The notes under the pieces: model-generated | The model's input: only the letters and a program-made list of their open reading frames with translations | Database searches by the model: none | What the model was told of the DNA's origin: nothing | DNA from: Takakia lepidozioides | Taxonomy: Eukaryota > Plantae > Bryophyta | Reading direction: 5' to 3' | Assembly: GCA_030704615.1 (NCBI GenBank) | Contig: CM060732.1 | Location: forward strand, 65,906,001-65,970,000 | Length of the DNA: 64,000 nucleotides | In this document: positions 20,758-54,700 of the stretch, in pieces | How the letters are laid out: each line of letters opens with the position of its first letter | Numbering within the stretch: position 1 is the first letter of the stretch | Translations under genes and position numbers: made by a program

Positions 20758-23700
20758 ATGGCAGGGCGCTCCGCCTCTCTGCTGCGCGTGGTGCTAGAGG
20801 CCATACCCAAAGCCCTGTCTTCGCCTTGCGGTGGAGGTTTCGTATCATGCCGAAGAATATCAGCCCAGGTTGTGGCTGTGGAATGGGTTTGCAGCCCGGC
20901 AACTCCTGAGAGCGGACAATTGCAACGGAGGACCCTGAACCGTAGTGAGCCTCGAGAGAGAGGAAGGACAGGTATTGACATGTGAAAACTCTGTGTTTGG
21001 GTCTCTAAATTGTGTTGGAGCGATCATCGCTGCATAGTGTCCTTGGAACATCCCAGGTCCATCTGGGTGGAAGAGTTCGTTTAAGGTCATAATTGACACC
21101 CTTGTCCTCCCTGCTCCGCTTCTTAGTGTTTGATAAATATCTGAACACTGATACATCTCCCGTGTATCCATTGGCTGCATGGGAGGGAGAGGCATACATA
21201 CTGGCATTGCCTGGTTGAAGTGGTTGTGGTCAGGCCCTTCTGGGATGCCCTGTCTTTGGGGATACATCCTGGTCTACAGAGGGTGAGGGTTGTGACCGTG
21301 CTGTCGCATACATAGCCCACGCCAATCCCGTCGCACGTATTTTTGAGGTCTCTTTTAAATGTAGAGGACTAGTTAGCACAGATGCACGATAAAATACTGT
21401 GGTGCCTCAAGTGCAGTGCCTGAGGCATGGGCAATAGGCACAGAAGGATGTACTCATCAACCATTTCCTGGGAGGGAGCTCTGAGCTGAACCTTTGAGAA
21501 CATTGTCAAGGCGGTACATTGACTTCAATCCAGTGGCAGGGAATGGAGTAGTAACGACAGGTCATGTAGACATTTTCCCGGTGGCACTGCGCTAGAGAAA
21601 CAGCAGGGGCAGAGAGAAAGACAAAAGAGGCTAATGCCTCTGAGACCTAGGTCAATTAGGAGCTACCGAAGGTCCATGTCTGTATTCAATAAGACTGCTA
21701 GTTGAGGCTAGTGAAGTTCTCATGTTCTTGTAGCTCTTGCACACAGAAGAGGCACGGAACAAAGAACGGCTCTGGCGGGAGTTCTTCTCAGACCCTTCCC
21801 AGTGGTGGGACAACAGATTTGATAAGGTGAGTCTGTCTTCAACTAGGACGGGAAGACCGTCAAGGAGGGTTTGTGATTAAAGCTGACCTCATGCCGTTTT
21901 TGAACTAAATCATATTTCCAGCTACTTCAATTGCAGTTTGTCTCTTCTAGCAAGAAGACCAACAAAAGTCCATGTTTCTACTGCTCATTTAGATACAGGA
22001 GATCCAAAAACATGGTTTTCCTTGTATTCATTGGATCTAGTTGCTTAACCAAAGGTCCTGCTCAACGCCTGCAGAAAATACTGCTTGAAACTTGACCCAG
22101 AGTTGAGATGGCTGTTAGGAAAAAACATCTTCACTACTTGTGCACAACTAGGAGTTCTCATTCTTCAAAGGATTGAAAATTGAAGTCCCTAATGGATGCT
22201 GTGTTGAAATATCATGAAATTCATAGAAATTCGACAGCATGTAGTCACCATAGTGAGATTACAGGATTAGTAGGCCCTTCTTAAGTAAGGTGTCCCATTC
22301 TCTTTGATTAGTGGTTGCAGCCTGTACTATGCAAAACTGGTTGGAGCTGTATGGCTGCTCAGTTGCCTCTGGTTGTTGCCACAGAAAAGTTCAAGATCGC
22401 CAGATTTCAGGCATAAGCGTACCAAGGAGGTCCTCTGGGTCGATGGTGCTTCAAACCCTTCTTGGGTGACACCAAAGCTAATTAGCATGGTAAAATCACG
22501 AAATGAATGTGTGGAGCAAGGGCCAGTTGAAGCAATGGCCGTGGACAGCAGTAAGAATCACCTACAATCACCTTGGCTTGAAGGGTAGCTTTGACCACAA
22601 TTAGCTCCTTCAGTATTCTTGCATCATCCCAAGGTTCTATTGTGTTTCTCTGTTTCTAGTATGCAGGAGGCAGAGAAAGAGCACCCAGCAAATTTTATCT
22701 AAAGCTACATAGCAGTTCTTAATAGGTGAGGCATTTAGAGGCTGACAAAGTTCTCATGTTCTTGTAGTTCTTACATACAGGTGATGCCACGAGTAAAGAC
22801 TGGCTCTGGCAGAGGTTCTTCTCAGATCCTGAAGAGTGGTGGGACAACAGATTTGATAAGGTGCAGCTGTCTTCATGGGGAGATGAATGAGTCTGTCAAG
22901 AAGGCTTGTGACTGAAGATGGCATGCTGATGTTTTGTGGCTGCCATTGTAATGCCAGTTTCTTAGATTTTGGCGTTGCTCTTTGTCTCAAAAACCAGCAA
23001 AAGCAGTTGCTAGTTTGACTATCAGTTGGCTATTCAAGGTTGTTCCTTGTAATTGTAAGAATCTTGAAGCTTTGTTGGTGGTAGGATGGGCTTTTGGAGG
23101 CTTTGGTTGAAGCTATGGCTGCTAAGCTGCGTACTCATGGTACTCATGGTTTGCACAGAAAAGTCCAAATTCACCAGACTTCAAACACAAGCGTACAAGG
23201 GATGTCCTTTGGGTTGATGGTCGGTCAAACCCTCCTTGGGTGAAAGCAGAGCTGGCTGCCATGATAAAATGTGGAGTACTGTCTGCTGACGGTGTTACTG
23301 CACCCCGTGCTCCTCCAGACCATGATTACTACGGGTATTATTTTTATGATAGTTGAAGGTTATAGCAGATAGAGTTCCCAGTGTATTCTTGTCCATGACC
23401 ACAGTAGTTTTGTTTTTTGTCGCTTATTGATAATAATAAGTCTATCCTCATCAAGGAGCTTTGAGATATGTTTTGTCTAGGTTTATAACAAGAAGTTTCA
23501 ATTCATGCAGGATGACAGATTTCGATCTGGAAGAATTCTTTGAATTGGACATCTTACCCATGACGCCTGCTTCTTACAACGGACCAATGGAGGGATTCAA
23601 CAAGAATTCGTCTGGCACTTTTGTGGATGTGATGACACTATGTAAGGCAGGACAGCTGCAAGAGGCATTGCACGCCTTGAATCATCAAGGCACTTCGGTA

Positions 23701-25158
23701 GACTCCTATACTTATGTCTGTCTCTCACAGGAGTGTGTCAAAGTTAAGGACCTTCATATGGGGAAACAGCTTCACAACCACATTATCCAAAGTGGATTCA
23801 AACCAAACATCTTTCTACATAACACTCTGGTCAATATGTATTCCAAGTGTGGGAGTGTGGTTGATGCACGGCAACTGTTTGACAAAATGCCTGAACGGGA
23901 TGTGTGTACGTGGACTACAATGGTGACAGGATATGCTAAGCATGGGGATAGTAGGGCGGCTTTGGAAATGTATGAGAAAATGATCCGGGAAGGAGTGATG
24001 CCCAACAGTGTCACATTCACATGTGTTCTCAATGCATGTGCTGATGTAGGAGCCCTGGAAAAGGGCAGAGAGGTCCATGCGGATGTCCGGAAATCGGAGA
24101 TTGCATCAGATGTCATTCTGGAGACAGCCCTTGCTGACATGTATTGCAAATGTGGAAGCATAAAGGATGCGAGGGAAGTCTTCGACAGTATGACTCATCG
24201 AAATGTGGTTTCCTGGAGCACCATGATCGCAGGATATACTCAGCATGGGTGTGCTAGGCTTGCTTTGGAGATGTATGAGCAAATGATAGAGGAAGGGGTA
24301 GCATCCAACAGGGTCACGTTCATGAGCGTTCTCAAGGCCTGCGCCAGCCTAGGAGACTTGGGAAAAGCCAAAGAGGTCCATGCTGACATCAGCAAAAATG
24401 GAATAGTGCCAGATATCATCCTAGAGAATATTCTTGTTGACATGTATGCCAAATGCAGGAGCATGAAGGATGCACGGCAAGTTTTTGATAGCATGGCTCA
24501 ACACAATGTGTTCTCATGGAGTGCAATGATAGCAGGATATGCTCACAATGGGTGCGGCAGGGAGGCTGTCAAGATGTATGAGCAAATGCAACGGGTAGGA
24601 GTCACCCCTGACAGGGTCATGTTCTGTTGCATTCTGGATGCATGTGGCCACTTTGCAGCCCTGCAAAAGGGTGAGGAGGTCCACGATGACATCTGGAAAG
24701 CAGGACTCGCATCAGATACCGCTGTGGAGACTGCCCTAGTCAAAATGTATGCCAAATGTGGGAGTATGAAGAAAGCACGGCAAGTGTTCGATAATATGGC
24801 TCAACGCGATGTGTCCTCATGGAGTGCAATGATGACAGGATACACACAGCATGGGTGTGCTATGGATGCCCTGCAACTATTTCAACAAATGCAACAGGAA
24901 GGCTTGAAGCCAGACGACATAACTTTCCTGGCAGAACATGCAACAAAGGAGATCCTCAGGAGTGATCCCCAGGACACTGAAGCTTACGTCTTGCTATCGA
25001 ACATCTACACTGCAGCTGGCAGGTGGAACGATCAAGCCAAAGTGAGAAAAATGATGAAGGAAAAGTTCTCAAAAACGAGCCCGGGTGCAGCTGCATCCAG
25101 ATGGACAACTGCGCACACTGTAGACAAGTCCCATCTCCAATTCACAAATCCATACTGA
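20758..25158 (+). CDS. 2x PDF(OSB-type)-motif + PLS-PPR protein with deleted/decayed E-DYW end (possible pseudogene)
   Basis: Phase-compatible exons 20758-20971 (transit-peptide-like), 21747-21826, 22385-22550, 22781-22860, 23159-23334 and 23511-25158. Motifs LWREFFSDPSQWWDNRFDK|KSSRSPDFRHKRTKEVLW and LWQRFFSDPEEWWDNRFDK|KSPNSPDFKHKRTRDVLW precede about 12 PLS motifs. Confidence 0.8.
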
Positions 25159-25742
25159 GCTCAATACAGTGTCTGGGCAGATGAAGGAGCCGGGGATTGT
25201 GCTTGACACACCCCTTTGTATTGCCTGATGTGGAGGAGCAAACAGAAGCTAGCAACACAGACCCCACACCATCGACACCGGGTCGCTTCGTGGATGATAA
25301 ATCTAGATGAAGTTCTGAGACGGATGTAAGAATTTAAGTTCTTTAGATGATTCATCCATATAACTCATCCCTGTAATCCATCCGTCTAATTTGTTTTTGC
25401 TGGCAGTATGCGACATGGGAGAATTTTAGGGGTTTCTTTTCCTTTTTTTTTTCCGTGTTACAAACCCATCGAGAGATGACTGCCGGACCGAGATTTTTAG
25501 GGCGGCTCCAAGACTATATATACCGAGTTTGGAAGATTTGAGGTGCAAACGATATGGGACTATTTGTTTGTGGAGTGGGAAAAGGCCCCACGATACTTTC
25601 TTCGATGCATCGAAAGCGGTTCCTGGGCTGCGGTCTGCGTGTGTGAGAATAGGAGAAGAAGAGAAGAAGAAGAAGAGTTTGCGAGGGATTTGGGGTTGCA
25701 GGGAGGAGGAGCAAGGTGAGGAGGGGTGCTTGGGATTGCAGG

Positions 25743-45640: not shown

Positions 45641-47584
45641 TGTTAGTTGCTCTTCTTCTTTCTCTCCATACCCAGATAGTGGAATTTCTGTCAGGAAAGT
45701 GGCTACATTTTCATAGGTCTGGGCACAGTAAGACCTTATCCTACACTGTATTTTTAAAGTGAATGATCTTTTCTTCTATACACTTCAACACTCAACCCTT
45801 GCCAAGCTGCTAGCAACTTTGCAATCTCTCATAGGGAAATGCCGCCAGAACATGCGATTGACTCATGCCCTGTCAACTACGAAGTGCTGAAAGGCAATGT
45901 CACTATGCTCACAGGGGGTGGAGTGCAATAAACTTTCACCATGCCCTCGTAGTTTTGTACTTTTTTGGTTATATGTTACTGTCCATAAGCCTTTGGGAAT
46001 TTTGAGGACATTACATATACTGCTACGGCTCACTCTCAAACAGCTGAGGTAACAGGTTGAACAAGCCCCATAATGATGGCATTTCCAATTCTGCCTCACA
46101 ATCTCGGCTAGGATAAGGTCCCTTTACCTTTATGTGATTCGCAAACACCATACAGTACAAATTCGCTAGTATACGTCTGCAGAAAAGGAAGTCATCACCT
46201 TGGGTCCTTGAGAGTTTTTGGTGACACTAAAAACTGATTATGCTCCTAACCTTTGAACCACTGTCAGCTCAAAAGTGCACATCACAGTTGGATACTTGAA
46301 CAAAATTTGATATGCTAAGCAGATGTGTTAGAAGTGACAGACAAACAAAAGCAGAGGCTTCCGACAGTGGCCAGGAACCAACAGAACCATCCTTCTATTT
46401 TCAGAACCGGTGGTATGCAATCAGACCCAAGACAAAAGAATTCTATGTGCAGGGGAAGAGCCAGAGAGAGTTGATACTCAAGTGTAGCATATACTAGGCG
46501 CGGTCAGGGCCCTTGAGCATACCACACCAACTCTCATCCATTTCCTTGTCTCTCTGTAAACTCTGTTTCCAATGGGAGCGGAATCGGAGAGATATAGAGC
46601 ATATAATCTCAAGAGTCCAAAGATAGTTGTGGGAGAAAACTCTAGAATGTAATCCTGTAAAACCAAGAAGTTATAATTTAGTTGACCAAGCAACAGCTGC
46701 AGGGACTACAAATCTGTGAGAAAAAACTAGGCCTCCAACCCACCGAAACAACAGTCGAATCAAACAAATGCACGCATGAAGTCCTGATTCAGACATCAGA
46801 GCAATGTCAGGCCCCCAAAGAGAGAGCTCCCCAACTCTGCAGAAAGGACTTTTGGCCTCCTTGACAACCACAGTGATAGAAGCCAATGGCTCACATGCAT
46901 AGACTAAGGCAAACTTTCTGACGCCCAAAAGCGCTAGTAATTCTTTTGTCAGGACAAAATCCCCACAACAGTAAGGCCACTATACAAATACATGAGTTCA
47001 GAAATTGCACCATTGTATGGTGGGTTGGCAGTTGGCAGCCTCAAGATGCAGATGGTCTGGAGAAGTTTGTAACAGAGGTAGTGCCAAGGCAAAGCTACTC
47101 GGTCGCCTCACACAATCTAACCTCTAAAGTAGGTGTGTGTGGATTTCAACCTTGGACAATACTTTGGCTCCTCCCCTGTATGTTTAAGTATACACCCAAA
47201 CTGCGATGAAGAGGCTATGTTTGAGGTCCTGAATAGATGGCAGATACATTGTGAATAGCCACATTTGCAGCATACTTACTAAAGAATGGGCCAGTTCTCG
47301 ATCCATAAAAAGTCCTTGCATGTGCAGGTACATATAACTGAAAGTGTCATCCTCCAAGTTCCTACTCTGTCTCAAGTCTCAACCTTTGGGATTTCCCGTG
47401 TTCAACGACTTCAGGATCTTCTCCAATGTTATGGTTCCTTGCAATTCAGAACAACTCTTTGATATCGTCTTCAATGACTCCAATGGTGCTGTTTAATGAT
47501 GGTACATGAAGAGTGATCGTCTTCATGGGCCGCTCACAGAAAGTATGGACAAATCATTTCTCTCGACTGCATTCTTTGCTCGTG

Positions 47585-50500
47585 TCACCAGTAGTCCCCA
47601 CAAGAACAAACCCCATCTTGGAAGTGGTGAAAACGGTTGGCATCCCTCACAATAACTGCTCGCCCCACAATCTTTGAGATGAACTTGGAGGCCGTGTGGC
47701 AGTCACCACACACTCGAAGGTTCTTCATCACGCAGATAGGCATCCCAGGGCGGGTGCTAATGAGCCCAAATGCAATGGCCAGCTTCTCACTGTGGTGGCA
47801 AAGAGAAAATTCCTTCTGCTCCTCCTCAACATCATGCAATACAAACCGTGTGTCAGGCACATACCCGCTCTCCTTCATCTTCCCAGACATTCTACTCAGC
47901 TCAGCATGGATTTCCTCTATTTGTGGATGCAATTTGTCTTCTACAGCGAACGTATGCACTTGGCCGTCAACTTCAATGAAGCTGCAGCCTGGCTCCTTTT
48001 TGACACCTCTATCCTCCATCATTTGTCGAACCTTTGCTTTATCATCCCACCTGCCAGCCGCCGCATAGATGTTTGATAGCAGCACATAAGTTGCAGCATT
48101 CAGTGGATCCGACTTGAGAAGGCATTTTGCCACTCGTTCTGCTAGCTCGACATCGCCATGAATCCTGCAGGCACCAAGCAAGGCCCCCCAGATTGAAGCA
48201 TCTGGTTCAATTGGCATTTTGCAAATTAGGTCCTGTGCTTCATCCAAGCGCCCTGCACGGCCAAGAAGGTCCACCATGCAGCTAAAATGCTTGAGTGTAG
48301 GTGTTAGGCCATGGTCTCGACTAATGGAATTGAAGTAATGACAGCCTTCATCCACAAGGCCCATATGGCTGCAAGCAGAGAGAACACATATAAAGATAAT
48401 ACCATCTGGCTTCAAGCCTTCATGTTGCATACGTTCAAATAGTCGAAGGGCCTCCCTACCACACCCATGTTGGGCACATCCTGATATCATCGCACTCCAT
48501 GAGACCACATTTCGTTCAGCCATACGGTCAAACACTTGACGTGCATCCTTTACACTCCCACAATTGGCATACATATTAACAAGAGTACTCTCCAATTCAA
48601 TAGATACAATTCCAGCCTTGATGATGTCAGCATGGACCTCTTTGCCTTTTCCCAAGGCTCCTAGGCCTGCACAAGCATTGAGAACACAAATGAACGTGAC
48701 CTTGTTCGGTATCACCCCTTCCTGTAACATTTGTTTATACATCTCAAAAGCCTCCCGACCACACCCATGCTGTGCATATCCTGCTATCATTGCACTCCAT
48801 GAGACCACATCTCGTTTTACCATGTTGTCAAACACGTGACGTGCATCCTTTATGCTCCCACATTTGGCATACATGTCAGCGAGGGCAGACTCCAGAATGT
48901 CATCAGATGCAATCCCAGCTATGATGATGTCAGCATGGACCTCTTTCCCTTTTCTCAGGTCTGCCAAGCTAGCACACGCATTGAGAACAGAAATAAACGT
49001 GACCTTGTCAGGTATCACACCTTCCTTTATCATTTGCTCATACATCTCAAAAGCCTCCCTAGGACACCCATACTGAGCATATCCTGCAATCATAACACTC
49101 CATGAGACCACATTTCGCTCAGCCATATTGTCAAAAACTTGCCGTGCATCCTTGAGGTTCCTGCTTTTGGCATACATGTCAGCAAGAGCAGTCTGCAGAA
49201 TAACATCCGGTGCAATTCCAGTTTTGATGATGTCAGCATGGACCTCTTTGCCCTTTTCCACTGCACCTAAGCTGGCACACGCATTGACAACACAAATGAA
49301 TGTAACCTTGTTGGGTGTCACTCCTTCCAGTTTCATTTGCTCATAGATCTCAAAAGCCTTCCTACCATACCCAAGCTTTGCATATCCCGCCATCATTGTA
49401 GTACATGTAAACACATCTCGTTGAGGCATTTCGTCAAACACTTGGCGTGCATCCTTTATGCTCCCACACTTCACGTACATGTTGACAAGGGTGTTGAGTA
49501 GAGAGATTTTTGGCTTGAATCCACTCCGAATAATGTGGGTGTGGATCTGCTTTCCCTCTGCAAGCCCTTTCTTGTTGATGCACTCCTGCAAGACACAGAC
49601 ATACGTACTGGAGTCAGCCTGTATATCTCCATTGTTCAATATGTGCACCGCTTCTTTCAGCCGTCCTGTCTTACATAGTGTTCTTACAGCCCCACAAGTG
49701 GTAGAAGAGCTCTGGCTGAGTCCCTTTCTTGATCCTCTTTCAAGGGCACTGGTAATAGTGGAGGTGCTAGTGTTGCTGCCAGTTGAATGTTCAATGAACA
49801 ACTGTGCCTGATTCAACCCCGCCATCCTGCATGACTCCAAACTTTCAGGTGTAAACCATACACTTAAAACCCACATAAATGTATTTCGAACACTCCTGAT
49901 TTTCAAAAAGAGACCACTGAGGGCACTCTCCTCCCTACATACCAGCAGGGTAACAACATTTACTTTCAGAACCATCTATCCCACTCCTATTGAAACTCTT
50001 AAAACATCATCACAACATACCTGCTGTATGCACAACCTGGGGCTCCATGCTGTACATCAACACAAGAACAATCACCGAATTGTGCTTGGCCTTGTTTCCT
50101 GGCAGAAAGCTCGGATTTCACCCAAGGCGGTTTCGGGCAGTCCTCAATCCAGAGGACCTCATTTGTGGGCGTATGTCTGAAGTAGGGTGCACTTGGAGTT
50201 CTCTGTGAAACCCCCACTGGGCAGCTGAGCATCAATAGTTTCAACCAAAGCCCCAAACAGACCAGGCTAAAACGAGCCAAGATCCAACCTTGAACAATAT
50301 ACTGATAGCAACAGTAAGAACCACTTTTGATAATTTTTTGCAGCAAAGGGCAAGCAAATCAACATGCCAATTCCAGTCACAACCCCTCCTTGAGGAACTC
50401 TTTCATGCCATTAATCAAGATAGCCTCACCTTATCAAATCTATTGTCCCACCACTCTGAGGGATCTGAGAAGATTTCCTTCCACAGCCATTGGGTGCTGA

Positions 50501-51095
50501 TTGCTTGCAACGAACTCAAAGAACCTGAGAACTTTGCCAATGCTGATTGCGTCAGTCTATATTCAGGAGTGCTAATTCTTAACTATAAATCTTCAGCAGC
50601 TCCTATCGTGGGTTTTGCGGATATTTAGTAGATGCCATTCTCACCATCCAAGACGGGAATGGGCTATAACAAGTTGGAGGTGCAACAAACTTACACGTTT
50701 CTTTTGCCTGCATTTGGGGTTTAATTCGTTCATTAGTTGCTGTGGTTCGACTGTGTTACTCAACTCTGTTCCATGGCCCCTCCTCTGGGAATCCACAGAA
50801 TCTCGTATCTCTGTCTGAGCAAAGTAGATACACAATTCGAAAGCAGATTCAGATTCCACGACATACTGAAGGAACTGATGGAAGGACAAAAACAGTTTCC
50901 GATTAGACTCACGTTCCTCTCCAGCCCGTGCATGACCATAAAATGAACTTAACGCACTTTCGGCAGTTATGAACCGAGGAAAATTGGGACTCTGAATTTC
51001 CCGTAAGGTCACAATATAGCGACCCAACAGAATAATCAAAGAGTTAAATGTGTCTAGTGTCTACCTCTCTTGGGTTCCCGAGACGTCTTAGCCAT
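47585..51095 (-). CDS. PDF(OSB-type)-motif + PLS-E-DYW PPR protein, C-to-U RNA editing factor type
   Basis: Main exon 49826-47585 has PLS repeats, E1/E2, PG box PGCSF, HSEKLA, CGDC and terminal DYW. Upstream phase-compatible exons: 50202-50021 (RTPSAPYFRHTPTNEVLW..PPWVKSEL), 50524-50430 (WLWKEIFSDPSEWWDNRFDK), and a first exon ending at 51065 (start uncertain, 51095 or about 51273). Confidence 0.92.
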
Positions 51096-51750
51096 TGCTT
51101 GCAGGGGTCTCGGGTCCGGAATTTCTGAGACAGATGCCCCCCACCTTAGCTCAGCAGCCTGCCCCTCCAAACTGCTGCAGGATGAGGGGCCTCCCGCCCC
51201 TTCACTACAAAAAGCCGGTAGTCGCTTCAGTATGGCCTCTTCTCCCTCCCAGCAAGAAGAGCTCTCTCCCCATCACCTTCATCCTAGAGCGTGCTCAGGC
51301 ATTCATCCAGCAAACAGTGCTGAGAACCCTTTTGGCATCTCCTCTCGAAATTCCCCAGCACGACGTGACCTTTCTATTATCTTCTTCAGCGCCGTGTCGG
51401 AGGCCCTTCCATCGGATCATTCCACTGAATTCTATTCCTCATAAAAGGTGGGTATTTACTCAGATCGAAAGAGAGTCATTGATTAAGGTACGGAGAAGAA
51501 TTCCTTGTCGGATATTCCTTGAGACATTTCTGACCTACTCATCAGATTCCCGGGCTGCCAGTGAAGGACGAAAGTGCAGGGACAGAAGGAAGAAGTGGTG
51601 TTTTGGACAGATTTCAGGGTTGGTTGCAGGTCGGACGGAAGAACCCATAATTTAGAAGAGAAGGATACGCAGAGGTTTCTGGGCTTGCACGCATTGGTAA
51701 TTTGATATATAATAAAGGTGGGATTGTGTTGGAGAGAGAGACGGAGGGCA

Positions 51751-54700
51751 ATGGTGGGAGTGTCGGAGGAAACGGAGCTAGCGAGATTGGAAAAGGAGGT
51801 TGAAGGAGGAGGTGGGGATGTGGCGGAATATTTAAGCTTAGTGAGGAAGCTTAAAGTTCGGCGATCCAGCAAAGTTGCCCGCCATGGCCTGGCTCTTTTG
51901 AACAATGCGGCGGCGAGATCTAAGCTAGGGGCTGATGGTAGGGGCATTTCGAACACTTTTGATGATCGCATGTTTATGTTTACTTAGGATGGGGGTGATG
52001 ATCGACTGTGCTGCCTGTGGCAGAGGGTAGAAGGCATGTTCGCAAGTTAGGGTTTAATGTAGAGAATGGTTGACCTCCACATTGGCCTTGTCTTCGTCCC
52101 GATCATGAACGCCTTCAATGTTCTAATCTATGAATATAGATTGATCGTCGCTTCGGCATTTTAAGGAACTGATAGATCACTTCTTGTGGTATTATCTAGA
52201 GCAACTTTGTTGCTGGTGGATGTGTTCCACCGGTATGCCATCAGCACGTTTTACCGAACGGGGTTTCGCGTAGAATGTTCTAATTACCTATGGATGCCCG
52301 TTAGCTGGGTATCACAACATGTAGCCTGCGGACAGTCCTCAAGAAAATCCTTGCTTGAGATGCCAAAAACTGGGCAATCGTCACGGGGACCCTTGCAGAA
52401 CTCGGCTCATGGGTACTTTTCTTTGCGGATGGAAGACTAGTAATCTGAAAGCTTGACCAGTGTATGCCACAGACGTTAAAATAATTTTGCAGGAGTCTTA
52501 AGAGGTCAATTGAATTTGCAGCTAGTAGGTTCACAGAATGTAGCCTCAAAAAGATTTGACACAGGCAATTCTATAGTAAACAGCTTGCCTGTTTCTTCCT
52601 TGTTGCCACACAGGTGAGAGGAGAATTGGGGTTGTAGAAGGGGATAGGGATAGTTTTGGTATCCTGTTTGATCTCATTGCTTGTAAGTACATTTCGTGCT
52701 CATGTGCAAATGGTGCTGACCAAATACTAGATACTACGGACTTCTGAACAGTATATACGGGACAAAGAATACTGAGAATTGGCTCCCGTGGAGGTTGGCG
52801 CAGTTTGGACAGTGTATGAGCAAGTGGCAATTGCTGCCATGGACTCCCATGCACTTGAAGCTGCAAAGGTACCACTTTATTTTCCTCATTTCATTTGAAA
52901 AATGGTAACTGTTGGGACTCGTTTATCTCCAATTTCAACTACTGATGGATCTTATTGAATGGTCACAATGGAAGGTTCAAAAATGTCTGTGGACAGGCAG
53001 GTTTTGTTCAGAGATTTCAACAAGATTCCAGTTTTAATTGGCGTGGATGGAATCTGTCTGCTGTTTTAGCTTGCATACTTACTCATAGTCTCGGTGTGGA
53101 TGACATGGGTCGCAGGATTGTGTTGGGGCTCTGATGACAAGATTTCCTGAGAGCATGCGTGTCGGTAGGTGCAGCATGCTTTCATAGTTGTGTCTACACC
53201 TCTTTCTGTGGACGTTAGAGAGTTCCTTTCTTTATTGCTTTCTTTCGCTGCGTTGTTTAAAGCCCAAGCCTCATCTGGTATTGTTCTTTCATAACATTTT
53301 TTGTCTGTGTTGAAGGAATTGATTTTGTCATAAAAGTCTAAGCAAGGTTGGTGGAGATATTTGCAGGGCGTTTGGAGGGAATGTGGCTGGAGGCCAAGGG
53401 AGCATGGCCACAAGCTGAGAAAGTGTATTTGAATCTTCTGTCTGACAACCCTTCTGATGCTGTCAGTTCACATCCTTCTCCCGTTCTGTTTGATTACTCG
53501 TTGTTATTTGTTTTTTATGGATGTGATTGTGCCTTTTGTGTGTGAGAGATGTACCCCTTGACTGTTCCCATTGAACGGTGGCTATGACATAACCTTAATG
53601 GCATAGGTCCCACCAGATATCTACCCTACCACGGTTGTGACGCTTCATCCCACAGGGCATTGAATCACATCCTGGAATGGCCATAGGACTCCTCCCACAA
53701 CCAACAGCAACTTCAAGAAGAATGGTTCATGTCAACAGGGGTCCAGTGAGACAGACAACCAGACAGCAGTTGGACATCCGGCTTTACTAACTGGAGAGCA
53801 GTCTGGTCACTGCGGATTCAATAGCTAAAGAGAGAAGGAGAGAAGACTCCGGCTGAAACCGGCGCATGGAATAGCTCAAGACGTATATTGTCTGCCTGTC
53901 AAGTTGCCTTGTTGTAGGGACTAATGTGTTGGGATTCTGGGTGTTTTGCAGCAACTTCATAAAAGGAGAGTGGCTATGGCAAAAGCTCAGGGCAACTTGA
54001 TTGGAGCTGTTGAATCATTGAATAAGTACCTGGAAACGTATGATTTTTGAAGCATCCATTCACATTTTTTGTGTCTATATGTTTGACATTTTACTAGCTT
54101 TGGTAACCCATTTATTGATGGGTGGTACAGATGTATCAATGCTCACAGCTTTCATAAATACAGGTGGCTGTGCATGTGGATGCCATTACTGTTGTATGCA
54201 TGAGTTCTTTCTCAGATTACCACTGAATTAATTAAGGTCTTTCTTAGTTTTCTGTGTACTGGGTCCTGTTGTGTACTGTGTCAAGACTCCTCTATTACTC
54301 GTGTGCAAAGTTGACTTGGATATGGTCTATATTTTTCCTTCAATTTACCTCTCATATGTGAGCCCGGAGTCCTCCTCCGCTCTCACATAGATATATGCTC
54401 GGGGATACTTGGATAAACTAAGCATGTTACCACGGTTCACTACTTACCGACGCAAGCCATAATGTCAGTCCAAAAGCACAATAAGTAGAGTAAGCTGTTT
54501 TAGGGTTGAGTTAAGTGCTCGACAAGGGGTGCTGTGTGGTATGCTTTCAACTGTACTTTAGAGTTAGTGGTTGATAAGCTTGCTCAGCATCGTTTTCTTA
54601 TTTTGCAGGTTTATGGCGGACTACGATGCTTGGAGAGAACTAGCTGACATCTATATCTCACTTCAAATGTAAGTGCACTTCAGGAATCCAGGGCTGAGTT

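What the first reader, a model, noticed from the sequence alone, without database searches (positions are those of the whole stretch)
47585..51273. OSB-type ssDNA-binding 'PDF' motif spliced onto an intact PPR-DYW cytidine deaminase
Seen: two small exons upstream of the PPR exon encode WLWKEIFSDPSEWWDNRFDK|RTPSAPYFRHTPTNEVLW..PPWVKSEL and join the PLS-E-DYW exon in frame (phase-2 intron, CAG|G ATG). Established: WWDNR..K..PDFKHK..LW is the PDF motif of plant organellar OSB proteins, where it binds ssDNA; DYW with HSE/CxxC is the C-to-U editing deaminase. Inference: a PDF-PPR-DYW architecture could tether editing to nucleoids, transcription bubbles or R-loops, or direct deamination to organellar ssDNA. 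ORF-only annotation misses the fusion. I do not know this architecture as a described class.
Basis: partly seen in the sequence, partly recalled or inferred. Interest (0 to 1): 0.85.

Follow-up and report, generated by a model that had tools for sequence, protein, structure and literature searches.

The report
PPR-DYW RNA editor with OSB PDF module
This is an expressed plant gene for an organelle RNA-editing enzyme (PPR-DYW type) whose small upstream exons add the "PDF" single-strand-binding module known from organellar OSB DNA-binding proteins, a combination found across seedless land plants for which I found no published description.

Summary
On the minus strand lies an intact PLS-E-DYW gene (47585-49826). 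Upstream, two small exons (50524-50430 and 50202-50021) encode the two halves of one PDF module. A profile built from PDF modules of other plants hits exactly these two pieces (E 2e-9 and 9e-9) and only the two modules of a neighbouring paralog elsewhere in the 64 kb. Transcript contigs from two public runs splice a first exon (51300-51065) to both PDF exons and on into a further exon. The last junction, onto the PPR exon at 49826, was not seen directly. It is inferred from the reading frame, the paralog and relatives.

The architecture is real and old. Annotated PPR proteins of Diphasiastrum (44 or more), Sphagnum, Calypogeia and Adiantum carry 1-3 N-terminal PDF modules. The same profile retrieves OSB proteins, and the intron after the conserved Lys is shared with an OSB gene.

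This copy reads PYF instead of PDF, a change absent from 464 modules. What the module does in an editing factor is untested. My best guess is unspecific single-strand RNA binding 5' of the PPR footprint.

No paper describing the fusion was found. This scan has already noted the family many times on other DNA of this genome.

The parts
51065..51300 (-). Exon 1 (5' limit not defined; at least to 51300). It holds the 5' leader with a 25-codon uORF (51282-51205), an in-frame stop at 51275-51273 and the first in-frame ATG at 51095 (MAKTSREPKR, then a split Gly codon). Donor is GAG|gtagac.
   Evidence: Contig X1 record 5 lies on 51063-51300, and X2 record 14 carries about 90 nt of it. A divergent + strand gene starts at 51568, so no further upstream exon is likely.
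50430..50524 (-). Acceptor is ctcag|GT, donor is AAG|gtgagg, and the intron that follows is phase 0.
   Evidence: hmmsearch E 2e-9, profile positions 3-25. The 93 unlaid letters between the two laid pieces of contig record 5 fit this exon's 95 nt, less the 2 nt (GT) shared with the donor. Depth is present in bin 50377-50557.
50021..50202 (-). Donor is AGCAG|gtatgt (phase 2).
   Evidence: hmmsearch E 9e-9, profile positions 25-58. Contigs of both runs lie on 50020-50202 with one synonymous difference and then leave the genome line at the donor.
49827..50020 (-). Intron 3 (inferred), phase 2. The acceptor ...agtcatgcag|G ATG is nearly identical to that of the paralog (...attcatgcag|G ATG at 23511).
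   Evidence: Sequence. The junction itself was not seen in RNA. There is low contig depth inside it, which may be unspliced RNA.
47585..49826 (-). Exon 4: a Ser/Thr-rich linker (MAGLNQAQLFIEHSTGSNTSTS...), about 14 PLS-type PPR motifs (about 49693-48161), the E motif (48160-47972), E+ and the DYW deaminase (47866-47588) with HSE and CGDCH, then the stop at 47587-47585. The 3' UTR runs past 47300.
   Evidence: Pfam, translation. Near-identical contigs lie at 47300-47614, 47900-48024, 49119-49242 and 49281-49453.
21748..25210 (+). Paralog in the same window. It has two tandem two-exon PDF modules (about 21748-21826 with 22385-22492, and about 22783-22860 with 23159-23335) spliced phase 2 onto a PPR exon (from 23511). 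That exon is decayed: internal deletion, a stop, and only remnants of DYW.
   Evidence: Used as the comparison for frame, intron phases and dN/dS.

Best explanation
A four-exon nuclear gene on the minus strand encodes an organellar C-to-U RNA-editing factor of the PLS-E-DYW class. Its N-terminus carries one OSB-type PDF module, split over exons 2 and 3.

Shown: the domains are present, the PDF module is homologous to that of OSB proteins, the 5' exons are spliced together in RNA, and the same architecture occurs in other seedless plants.

Inferred: exon 3 joins the PPR exon at 49826, and translation starts at the ATG at 51095.

Proposed mechanism (inference). The PPR tract reads the RNA upstream of the target C, and the DYW domain deaminates it. 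The PDF module sits at the end of the protein that faces the 5' side of the bound RNA. There it acts as a sequence-unspecific clamp for single-stranded nucleic acid, which raises affinity or keeps the site unfolded. This would be a built-in helper in plants whose editing complexes appear simpler than those of seed plants. In this copy the module may be weakened, because it reads PYF instead of PDF.
For: Domains.

PDF halves: E 2e-9 and 9e-9, with complementary profile ranges.

RNA: spliced contigs in two runs cover exon 1, exon 2 and exon 3, and the 3' end of the gene.

Frame: it is kept through a phase-2 junction both here and in the diverged paralog, which has the same acceptor sequence.

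Selection: dN/dS on the PDF exons against the paralog modules is 0.17-0.39.

Same architecture elsewhere: 44 or more Diphasiastrum PPR proteins, and proteins of Sphagnum, Calypogeia, Adiantum and one Logan contig. Several end in DYW and have a presequence-like N-terminus before the PDF module.

Homology to OSB: 1274 representative proteins at E<=1e-3, mostly SSB-fold plus C-terminal PDF. The intron after the conserved Lys is shared with an Asparagus OSB2-like gene.

Function of PDF: the PDF motif of AtOSB1 is reported as sufficient for ssDNA binding (PMC6963530).

Context: a review of moss PPR proteins suggests a simpler editing complex in mosses than in seed plants (PMC9459714).
Against: The exon 3 to PPR junction was not observed directly.

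The N-terminus before the PDF module is only about 22 aa (MAKTSREPKRGSLSSLQAISTQ) and is not an obvious transit peptide. The ATG at 49825 has a good context and is followed by a Ser/Thr-rich stretch that looks like a transit peptide, so a PDF-less product is possible.

The Asp of PDF is Tyr here. Among 464 modules that position is D 449, A 11, S 2, N 1 and never Y.

No binding, localisation or editing data exist for any PDF-PPR protein. RNA binding by PDF has not been shown.

The predicted fold has no match in the PDB that would hint at a mechanism.
Confidence: 0.55

Rival explanations
1. The small exons are only a 5' leader. The PPR-DYW protein is translated from the ATG at 49825, and the PDF reading frame in this copy is an untranslated relic of an ancestral fusion.
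For: The ATG at 49825 lies directly after the acceptor, in a strong context (A at -3, G at +4), and is followed by a Ser/Thr-rich, transit-peptide-like stretch. The leader holds a uORF. The PDF signature is altered to PYF. The N-terminus before the PDF module is short.
Against: 13 of 14 near-invariant PDF positions are kept. dN/dS is 0.17-0.39. The frame is kept, without stops, through the 28-codon tail of exon 3 and the phase-2 junction, both here and in the paralog. The Met after the module is itself a conserved residue of PDF-PPR proteins (...ATM...). Annotated relatives are read through.
Confidence: 0.15
2. The PDF module binds organellar ssDNA and tethers the editing factor to nucleoids, transcription bubbles or R-loops for co-transcriptional editing. 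In the extreme form it lets the DYW deaminase act on ssDNA.
For: The only tested activity of a PDF motif is ssDNA binding (PMC6963530; PMC13393729). The module in PPR proteins is a close homologue of it.
Against: No evidence of DNA association for any PPR-DYW protein was found here. The PPR tract and DYW domain are of the ordinary RNA-editing type. PPR-borne modules mostly form a clade of their own and may have changed ligand. This copy lacks the Asp.
Confidence: 0.15
3. The PDF module is a protein-protein interaction or oligomerisation element, or an N-terminal cap of the PPR solenoid, rather than a nucleic-acid binder.
For: In the Sphagnum gene the second PDF exon runs without an intron into the PPR region, and in Sphagnum and Calypogeia proteins the first PPR motif follows a few residues after the module. 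The module is a compact alpha-beta-alpha unit rich in Trp and Phe, predicted with pLDDT 89.5. AtOSB2 is reported to form tetramers.
Against: In this gene and in Diphasiastrum a long, variable linker separates the PDF module from the repeats. Modules occur in 1-3 tandem copies, as in OSB proteins, which fits additive ligand binding better than capping.
Confidence: 0.12

Closest known systems
[quoted passage not shown]
   Same: Same PDF module of about 55 aa (W..F..P..WWD.R..K / ..PDFKHK...LW....P.WV), the same phase-0 intron after the conserved Lys, occurrence in 1-3 or more tandem copies, and a plant-organelle context.
   Different: OSB proteins have an SSB-like OB fold N-terminal to C-terminal PDF modules and no PPR or DYW. 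This gene has no OB fold, the module is N-terminal, and it is followed by PPR-E-DYW. OSB proteins act on DNA recombination, not RNA editing.
PLS-E-DYW RNA-editing factors (for example Physcomitrium PPR56 and PPR65, and Arabidopsis DYW-type factors)
   Same: PLS repeats, E and E+ motifs, and a complete DYW deaminase with HSE, CxDCH and a terminal DYW.
   Different: The described factors have only a transit peptide in front of the repeats. The list of accessory domains in the moss PPR review (RRM, LAGLIDADG, SMR, NYN, CBS, SAP) does not include PDF.
PPR proteins with an accessory nucleic-acid-binding domain (maize PPR4 with an N-terminal RRM; PPR-SMR)
   Same: The same logic: a helical-repeat RNA reader plus a second small nucleic-acid-binding or processing domain.
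   Different: Those are P-class splicing or stability factors with unrelated domains. Here the partner is a PLS-DYW editor and the domain is the OSB PDF module.
Unnamed PDF-PPR proteins in public proteomes (Diphasiastrum complanatum KAJ7517631 and others; Sphagnum fallax KAH8950714; Calypogeia fissa; Adiantum capillus-veneris KAI5061374)
   Same: Same order of domains. In Diphasiastrum there is the same intron in the linker and the same LC.xGRLKEA start of the repeat region.
   Different: About 50% identity in the PPR part. They have the canonical PDFKHK, where this copy has PYFRHT. Many carry 2-3 modules or a longer presequence.

Membership tests
PPR-DYW RNA-editing factor | Tandem PLS-type pentatricopeptide repeats | tested here: met
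   Pfam PPR 1e-75 (9 stretches) and PPR_2 1e-72.
PPR-DYW RNA-editing factor | E and E+ motifs followed by a complete DYW deaminase domain with the HxE and CxxCH zinc ligands | tested here: met
   E_motif 4e-21 and Eplus 2e-4. DYW_deaminase 3.8e-42 covers 93 of 93 profile positions. HSE, CGDCH and a terminal GDYW are read.
PPR-DYW RNA-editing factor | Import into plastids or mitochondria, and editing of a defined site | not testable with these tools
   No targeting predictor and no organelle transcriptome were at hand. The N-terminus before the PDF module is short.
PDF motif (OSB-type) | Significant match to a PDF profile over the whole module | tested here: met
   The two exons match profile positions 3-25 (E 2e-9) and 25-58 (E 9e-9). 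The same profile finds OSB proteins.
PDF motif (OSB-type) | The conserved signature residues, including Pro-Asp-Phe | tested here: inconclusive
   W7, P14, W17, D19, R21, K24, P30, F32, H34, L41, W42, P49 and W51 are kept. Asp31 is Tyr, which is seen in none of 464 modules.
PDF motif (OSB-type) | Gene structure: a phase-0 intron after the conserved Lys | tested here: met
   Shared by this gene, the paralog, Diphasiastrum L002, Sphagnum L003 and all three modules of the Asparagus OSB2-like gene L001.
PDF motif (OSB-type) | Binds single-stranded DNA | not testable with these tools
   Known only for AtOSB1 and AtOSB2 from the literature.
OSB protein family | SSB-like OB-fold domain N-terminal to the PDF motif(s) | tested here: not met
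   No SSB/OB match in any exon. The module is followed by PPR repeats instead. The gene is therefore not an OSB gene.

The most novel reading that the evidence does not exclude
The PDF module keeps its ssDNA-binding activity and couples a large share of the editing factors of seedless plants to the organellar nucleoid or to the non-template DNA strand. Editing would then be co-transcriptional there. In the extreme case, some members would deaminate single-stranded organellar DNA.
Probability: 0.12. Interest if true: 0.85.

Novelty: new variant of a known kind. Interest (0 to 1): 0.6.

Why it matters
PPR-DYW proteins are the site-specific C-to-U editors of plant organelles and are being developed as programmable RNA editors. 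A whole, old subfamily carries an extra single-strand-binding module taken from the OSB genome-maintenance proteins. It includes dozens of genes in a lycophyte and many in Sphagnum. Its existence suggests an unrecognised way of strengthening or localising editing in plants whose editing complexes appear simpler than those of seed plants.

This can be tested directly by adding and removing the module in the established E. coli editing assay and by ssRNA/ssDNA binding assays. It also gives the PDF motif, so far treated as an OSB-only feature, a second protein context. The shared intron points to exon shuffling as the way it arose. This particular locus adds one expressed member with an unusual PYF variant; it is not the first sighting in this scan.

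Tried and rejected
Pfam has no model for the PDF module; the exons gave nothing there.

Direct proof of the exon 3 to PPR junction failed.

The first protein search, with the N-terminal 140 aa of the PPR exon, was swamped by generic PPR hits at 39-56% identity. This genome's own proteins are therefore not in the database.

Foldseek and VIA-align against the PDB gave no meaningful fold match for the PDF model. The best results were E 5.7, a non-significant WW-domain row, and Z up to 2.6.

Look-ups of P0191 and P0005 in the look-up of encoding contigs found no record; longer or single isoforms worked.

I rejected the idea that the exons belong to a separate OSB-like gene. There is no OB fold nearby, the neighbour upstream is a divergent + strand gene, and the transcripts splice onward from exon 3.

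I rejected a further upstream transit-peptide exon in the minus-strand ORF 51483-51971. That stretch is exon 1 of the + strand neighbour, with its donor GT at 51938.

The tree of modules has only 60 columns and low support (50 for the main PPR clade). It suggests, but does not prove, a single origin.

The joined four-exon protein was deliberately never assembled, searched or folded. All searches were exon by exon, by reference.

Full report
**What is in the sequence**

The long minus-strand ORF 47585-49975 contains, from the Met at 49825, a 746-aa protein. Pfam scores it as PPR (1e-75), E_motif (4e-21), E+ and a full-length DYW_deaminase (3.8e-42). The HSE and CGDCH zinc ligands and a terminal GDYW are present. 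The editing-factor part is therefore intact.

- Exon A ends ...WLWKEIFSDPSEWWDNRFDK|gtgagg at 50430.
- Exon B begins cag|AGA at 50202 (RTPSAPYFRHTPTNEVLWIEDCPKPPWVKSEL...) and ends AGCAG|gtatgt at 50021.
- The PPR exon begins cag|G ATG at 49826, so AG+G restores the frame.

**Is it more than chance?**

I took PDF modules from PPR proteins of other species (alignment A1, 15 modules) and built an HMM. I searched it against all 3081 six-frame pieces of the window. Only six pieces were significant:
- Exon A, E 2e-9, profile positions 3-25.
- Exon B, E 9e-9, profile positions 25-58.
- Four half-modules of a paralog at 21.7-23.4 kb on the plus strand.

The next hit had E 0.5. The two exons are thus the complementary halves of one module, split at the same profile position in all three modules of the window.

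**Transcription and splicing**

Two public runs of the same organism hold spliced contigs.
- X1 record 5 (540 nt) lies on 51063-51300 and on 50020-50202. The 93 letters in between fit exon A (95 nt, less the GT shared with the donor). A further 25 letters lie beyond exon B.
- X2 record 14 (380 nt) has the same structure, with 12 letters beyond exon B.
- Near-identical contigs also cover parts of the PPR exon and the 3' end (47300-47614).

The junctions 51065|50524 and 50430|50202, and use of the donor at 50021, are therefore supported by RNA.

The acceptor at 49826 is not directly shown. It rests on four points:
- The piece on exon B runs one base past the donor (G at 50020). That fits a next exon starting with G, as 49826 does.
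- The frame is kept.
- The paralog has the same phase-2 junction and an almost identical acceptor (...tcatgcag|GATG).
- Relatives have the same layout.

Some depth inside the intron may explain why both contigs break within 30 nt of the junction.

A plus-strand gene has its first exon at 51568-51937, with a GT donor at 51938. Exon 1 of our gene must therefore start between about 51300 and 51560, and no further upstream exon is likely.

In the PDF frame there is a stop at 51275-51273, and the first ATG is at 51095 (MAKTSREPKR...). A 25-codon uORF lies at 51282-51205.

All work was done exon by exon, by reference.

**Coding or relic?**

- dN/dS between this module and the two paralog modules is 0.17-0.39 over 52 codons.
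- The 28-codon tail of exon B is open and in phase with the PPR exon. The same holds for the differently sequenced tail of the paralog.
- 13 of 14 near-invariant positions of the module are kept.
- The Asp of Pro-Asp-Phe is Tyr here. Among 464 modules that column reads D 449, A 11, S 2, N 1.

This copy is therefore a slightly aberrant member.

The Met at 49825 is itself conserved in relatives (...A-T-M...). It is followed by a Ser/Thr-rich stretch, so a second, PDF-less product from this ATG cannot be excluded.

**The architecture elsewhere**

- A search with the PDF region of a Diphasiastrum hit found 44 Diphasiastrum complanatum PPR proteins and one from Sphagnum, with 1-3 N-terminal modules.
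- A search with a Sphagnum module found many Sphagnum genes, two from the liverwort Calypogeia fissa and one more from Diphasiastrum. Several of these end in DYW, and several have a presequence-like N-terminus before the module.
- The exhaustive profile search gave 1274 representatives at E<=1e-3. Of the 149 newly listed proteins among the best 150 rows, 10 carry PPR repeats. These include Adiantum capillus-veneris and an unnamed Logan contig with three modules.
- The sampled mid-sized hits (366-500 aa) mostly pair an SSB-like OB fold with C-terminal PDF, the OSB architecture. One is named 'protein OSB2, chloroplastic-like'.

Gene structure agrees. The intron after the conserved Lys is present in all three modules of the Asparagus OSB2-like gene, in Diphasiastrum and Sphagnum PDF-PPR genes, and here. 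This points to transfer of the two-exon module at the DNA level.

In a tree of 329 modules, 62 of 65 PPR-borne ones fall in one clade. Its only other members are short fragments. Support is low (50). Label changes number 10, against about 60 when labels are shuffled.

**Function**

The literature available to me reports the following:
- The PDF motif of AtOSB1 is sufficient for ssDNA binding (PMC6963530).
- A 2026 study of OSB evolution treats PDF as an OSB feature and does not mention PPR (PMC13393729).
- A review of moss PPR proteins lists RRM, LAGLIDADG, SMR, NYN, CBS and SAP as accessory domains, but not PDF. It also suggests a simple editing complex in mosses (PMC9459714).

The predicted module is a confident small helix, three-strand, helix unit (pLDDT 89.5). 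It has no PDB match.

My best reading is an unspecific single-strand binder at the 5' side of the PPR footprint. DNA or nucleoid tethering and protein-protein interaction remain open, and none of the three was tested.

**Novelty and limits**

Eight full-text searches found no description of a PDF-PPR protein. Subscription papers are not covered.

The proteins exist in public annotation as 'hypothetical' or generic PPR proteins. This scan has already reported the family many times on other DNA of the same genome. I re-tested those claims independently here.

The locus is thus an expressed, apparently intact member of an undescribed but widespread variant of PPR-DYW editing factors. It is notable only for its PYF substitution.

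Noticed in passing
window 21748-25210 (+): A second PDF-PPR gene with two tandem two-exon PDF modules. Its PPR exon has an internal deletion, an in-frame stop and only remnants of the DYW region, so it is probably a pseudogene.
   Followed up: partly
window 51568-51937 (+): First exon of a divergently transcribed neighbour gene (MVGVSEETELARLEKEVEGGGGD...), with a GT donor at 51938. It is covered by 1.4-kb contigs in both runs and has no Pfam match. It is separated from the PDF-PPR gene's first exon by an interval of about 270 bp that probably holds both promoters.
   Followed up: partly
window 51205-51282 (-): A 25-codon uORF (MKVMGRELFLLGGRRGHTEATTGFL) in the transcribed leader of the PDF-PPR gene.
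   Followed up: no
L001 3772-4921, L002 817-2991, L003 1201-1520: Every PDF module is split by an intron directly after the conserved Lys. This holds in an angiosperm OSB2-like gene as well as in lycophyte and moss PDF-PPR genes, so the two-exon module looks like a shuffled unit.
   Followed up: yes
P0170 (Sanguina aurantia MAG, 521 aa): A chlorophyte snow-alga protein with five PDF stretches (E 2e-71). A 2026 paper places the origin of OSB genes after the split from Chlamydomonas, so the module may be older than stated there.
   Followed up: no
P0164 (Kingdonia uniflora, 1160 aa); P0190 (Striga); P0200 (Coptis): One protein has 13 PDF stretches. Two others are annotated fusions of PDF modules with an ICR2-like protein and a kinesin-domain protein. 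These may be gene-model merges.
   Followed up: no
window 50140: Both runs read A where the genome has G (C to T in gene sense). The change is synonymous (GAC to GAT, Asp) and is most likely a polymorphism between individuals.
   Followed up: no
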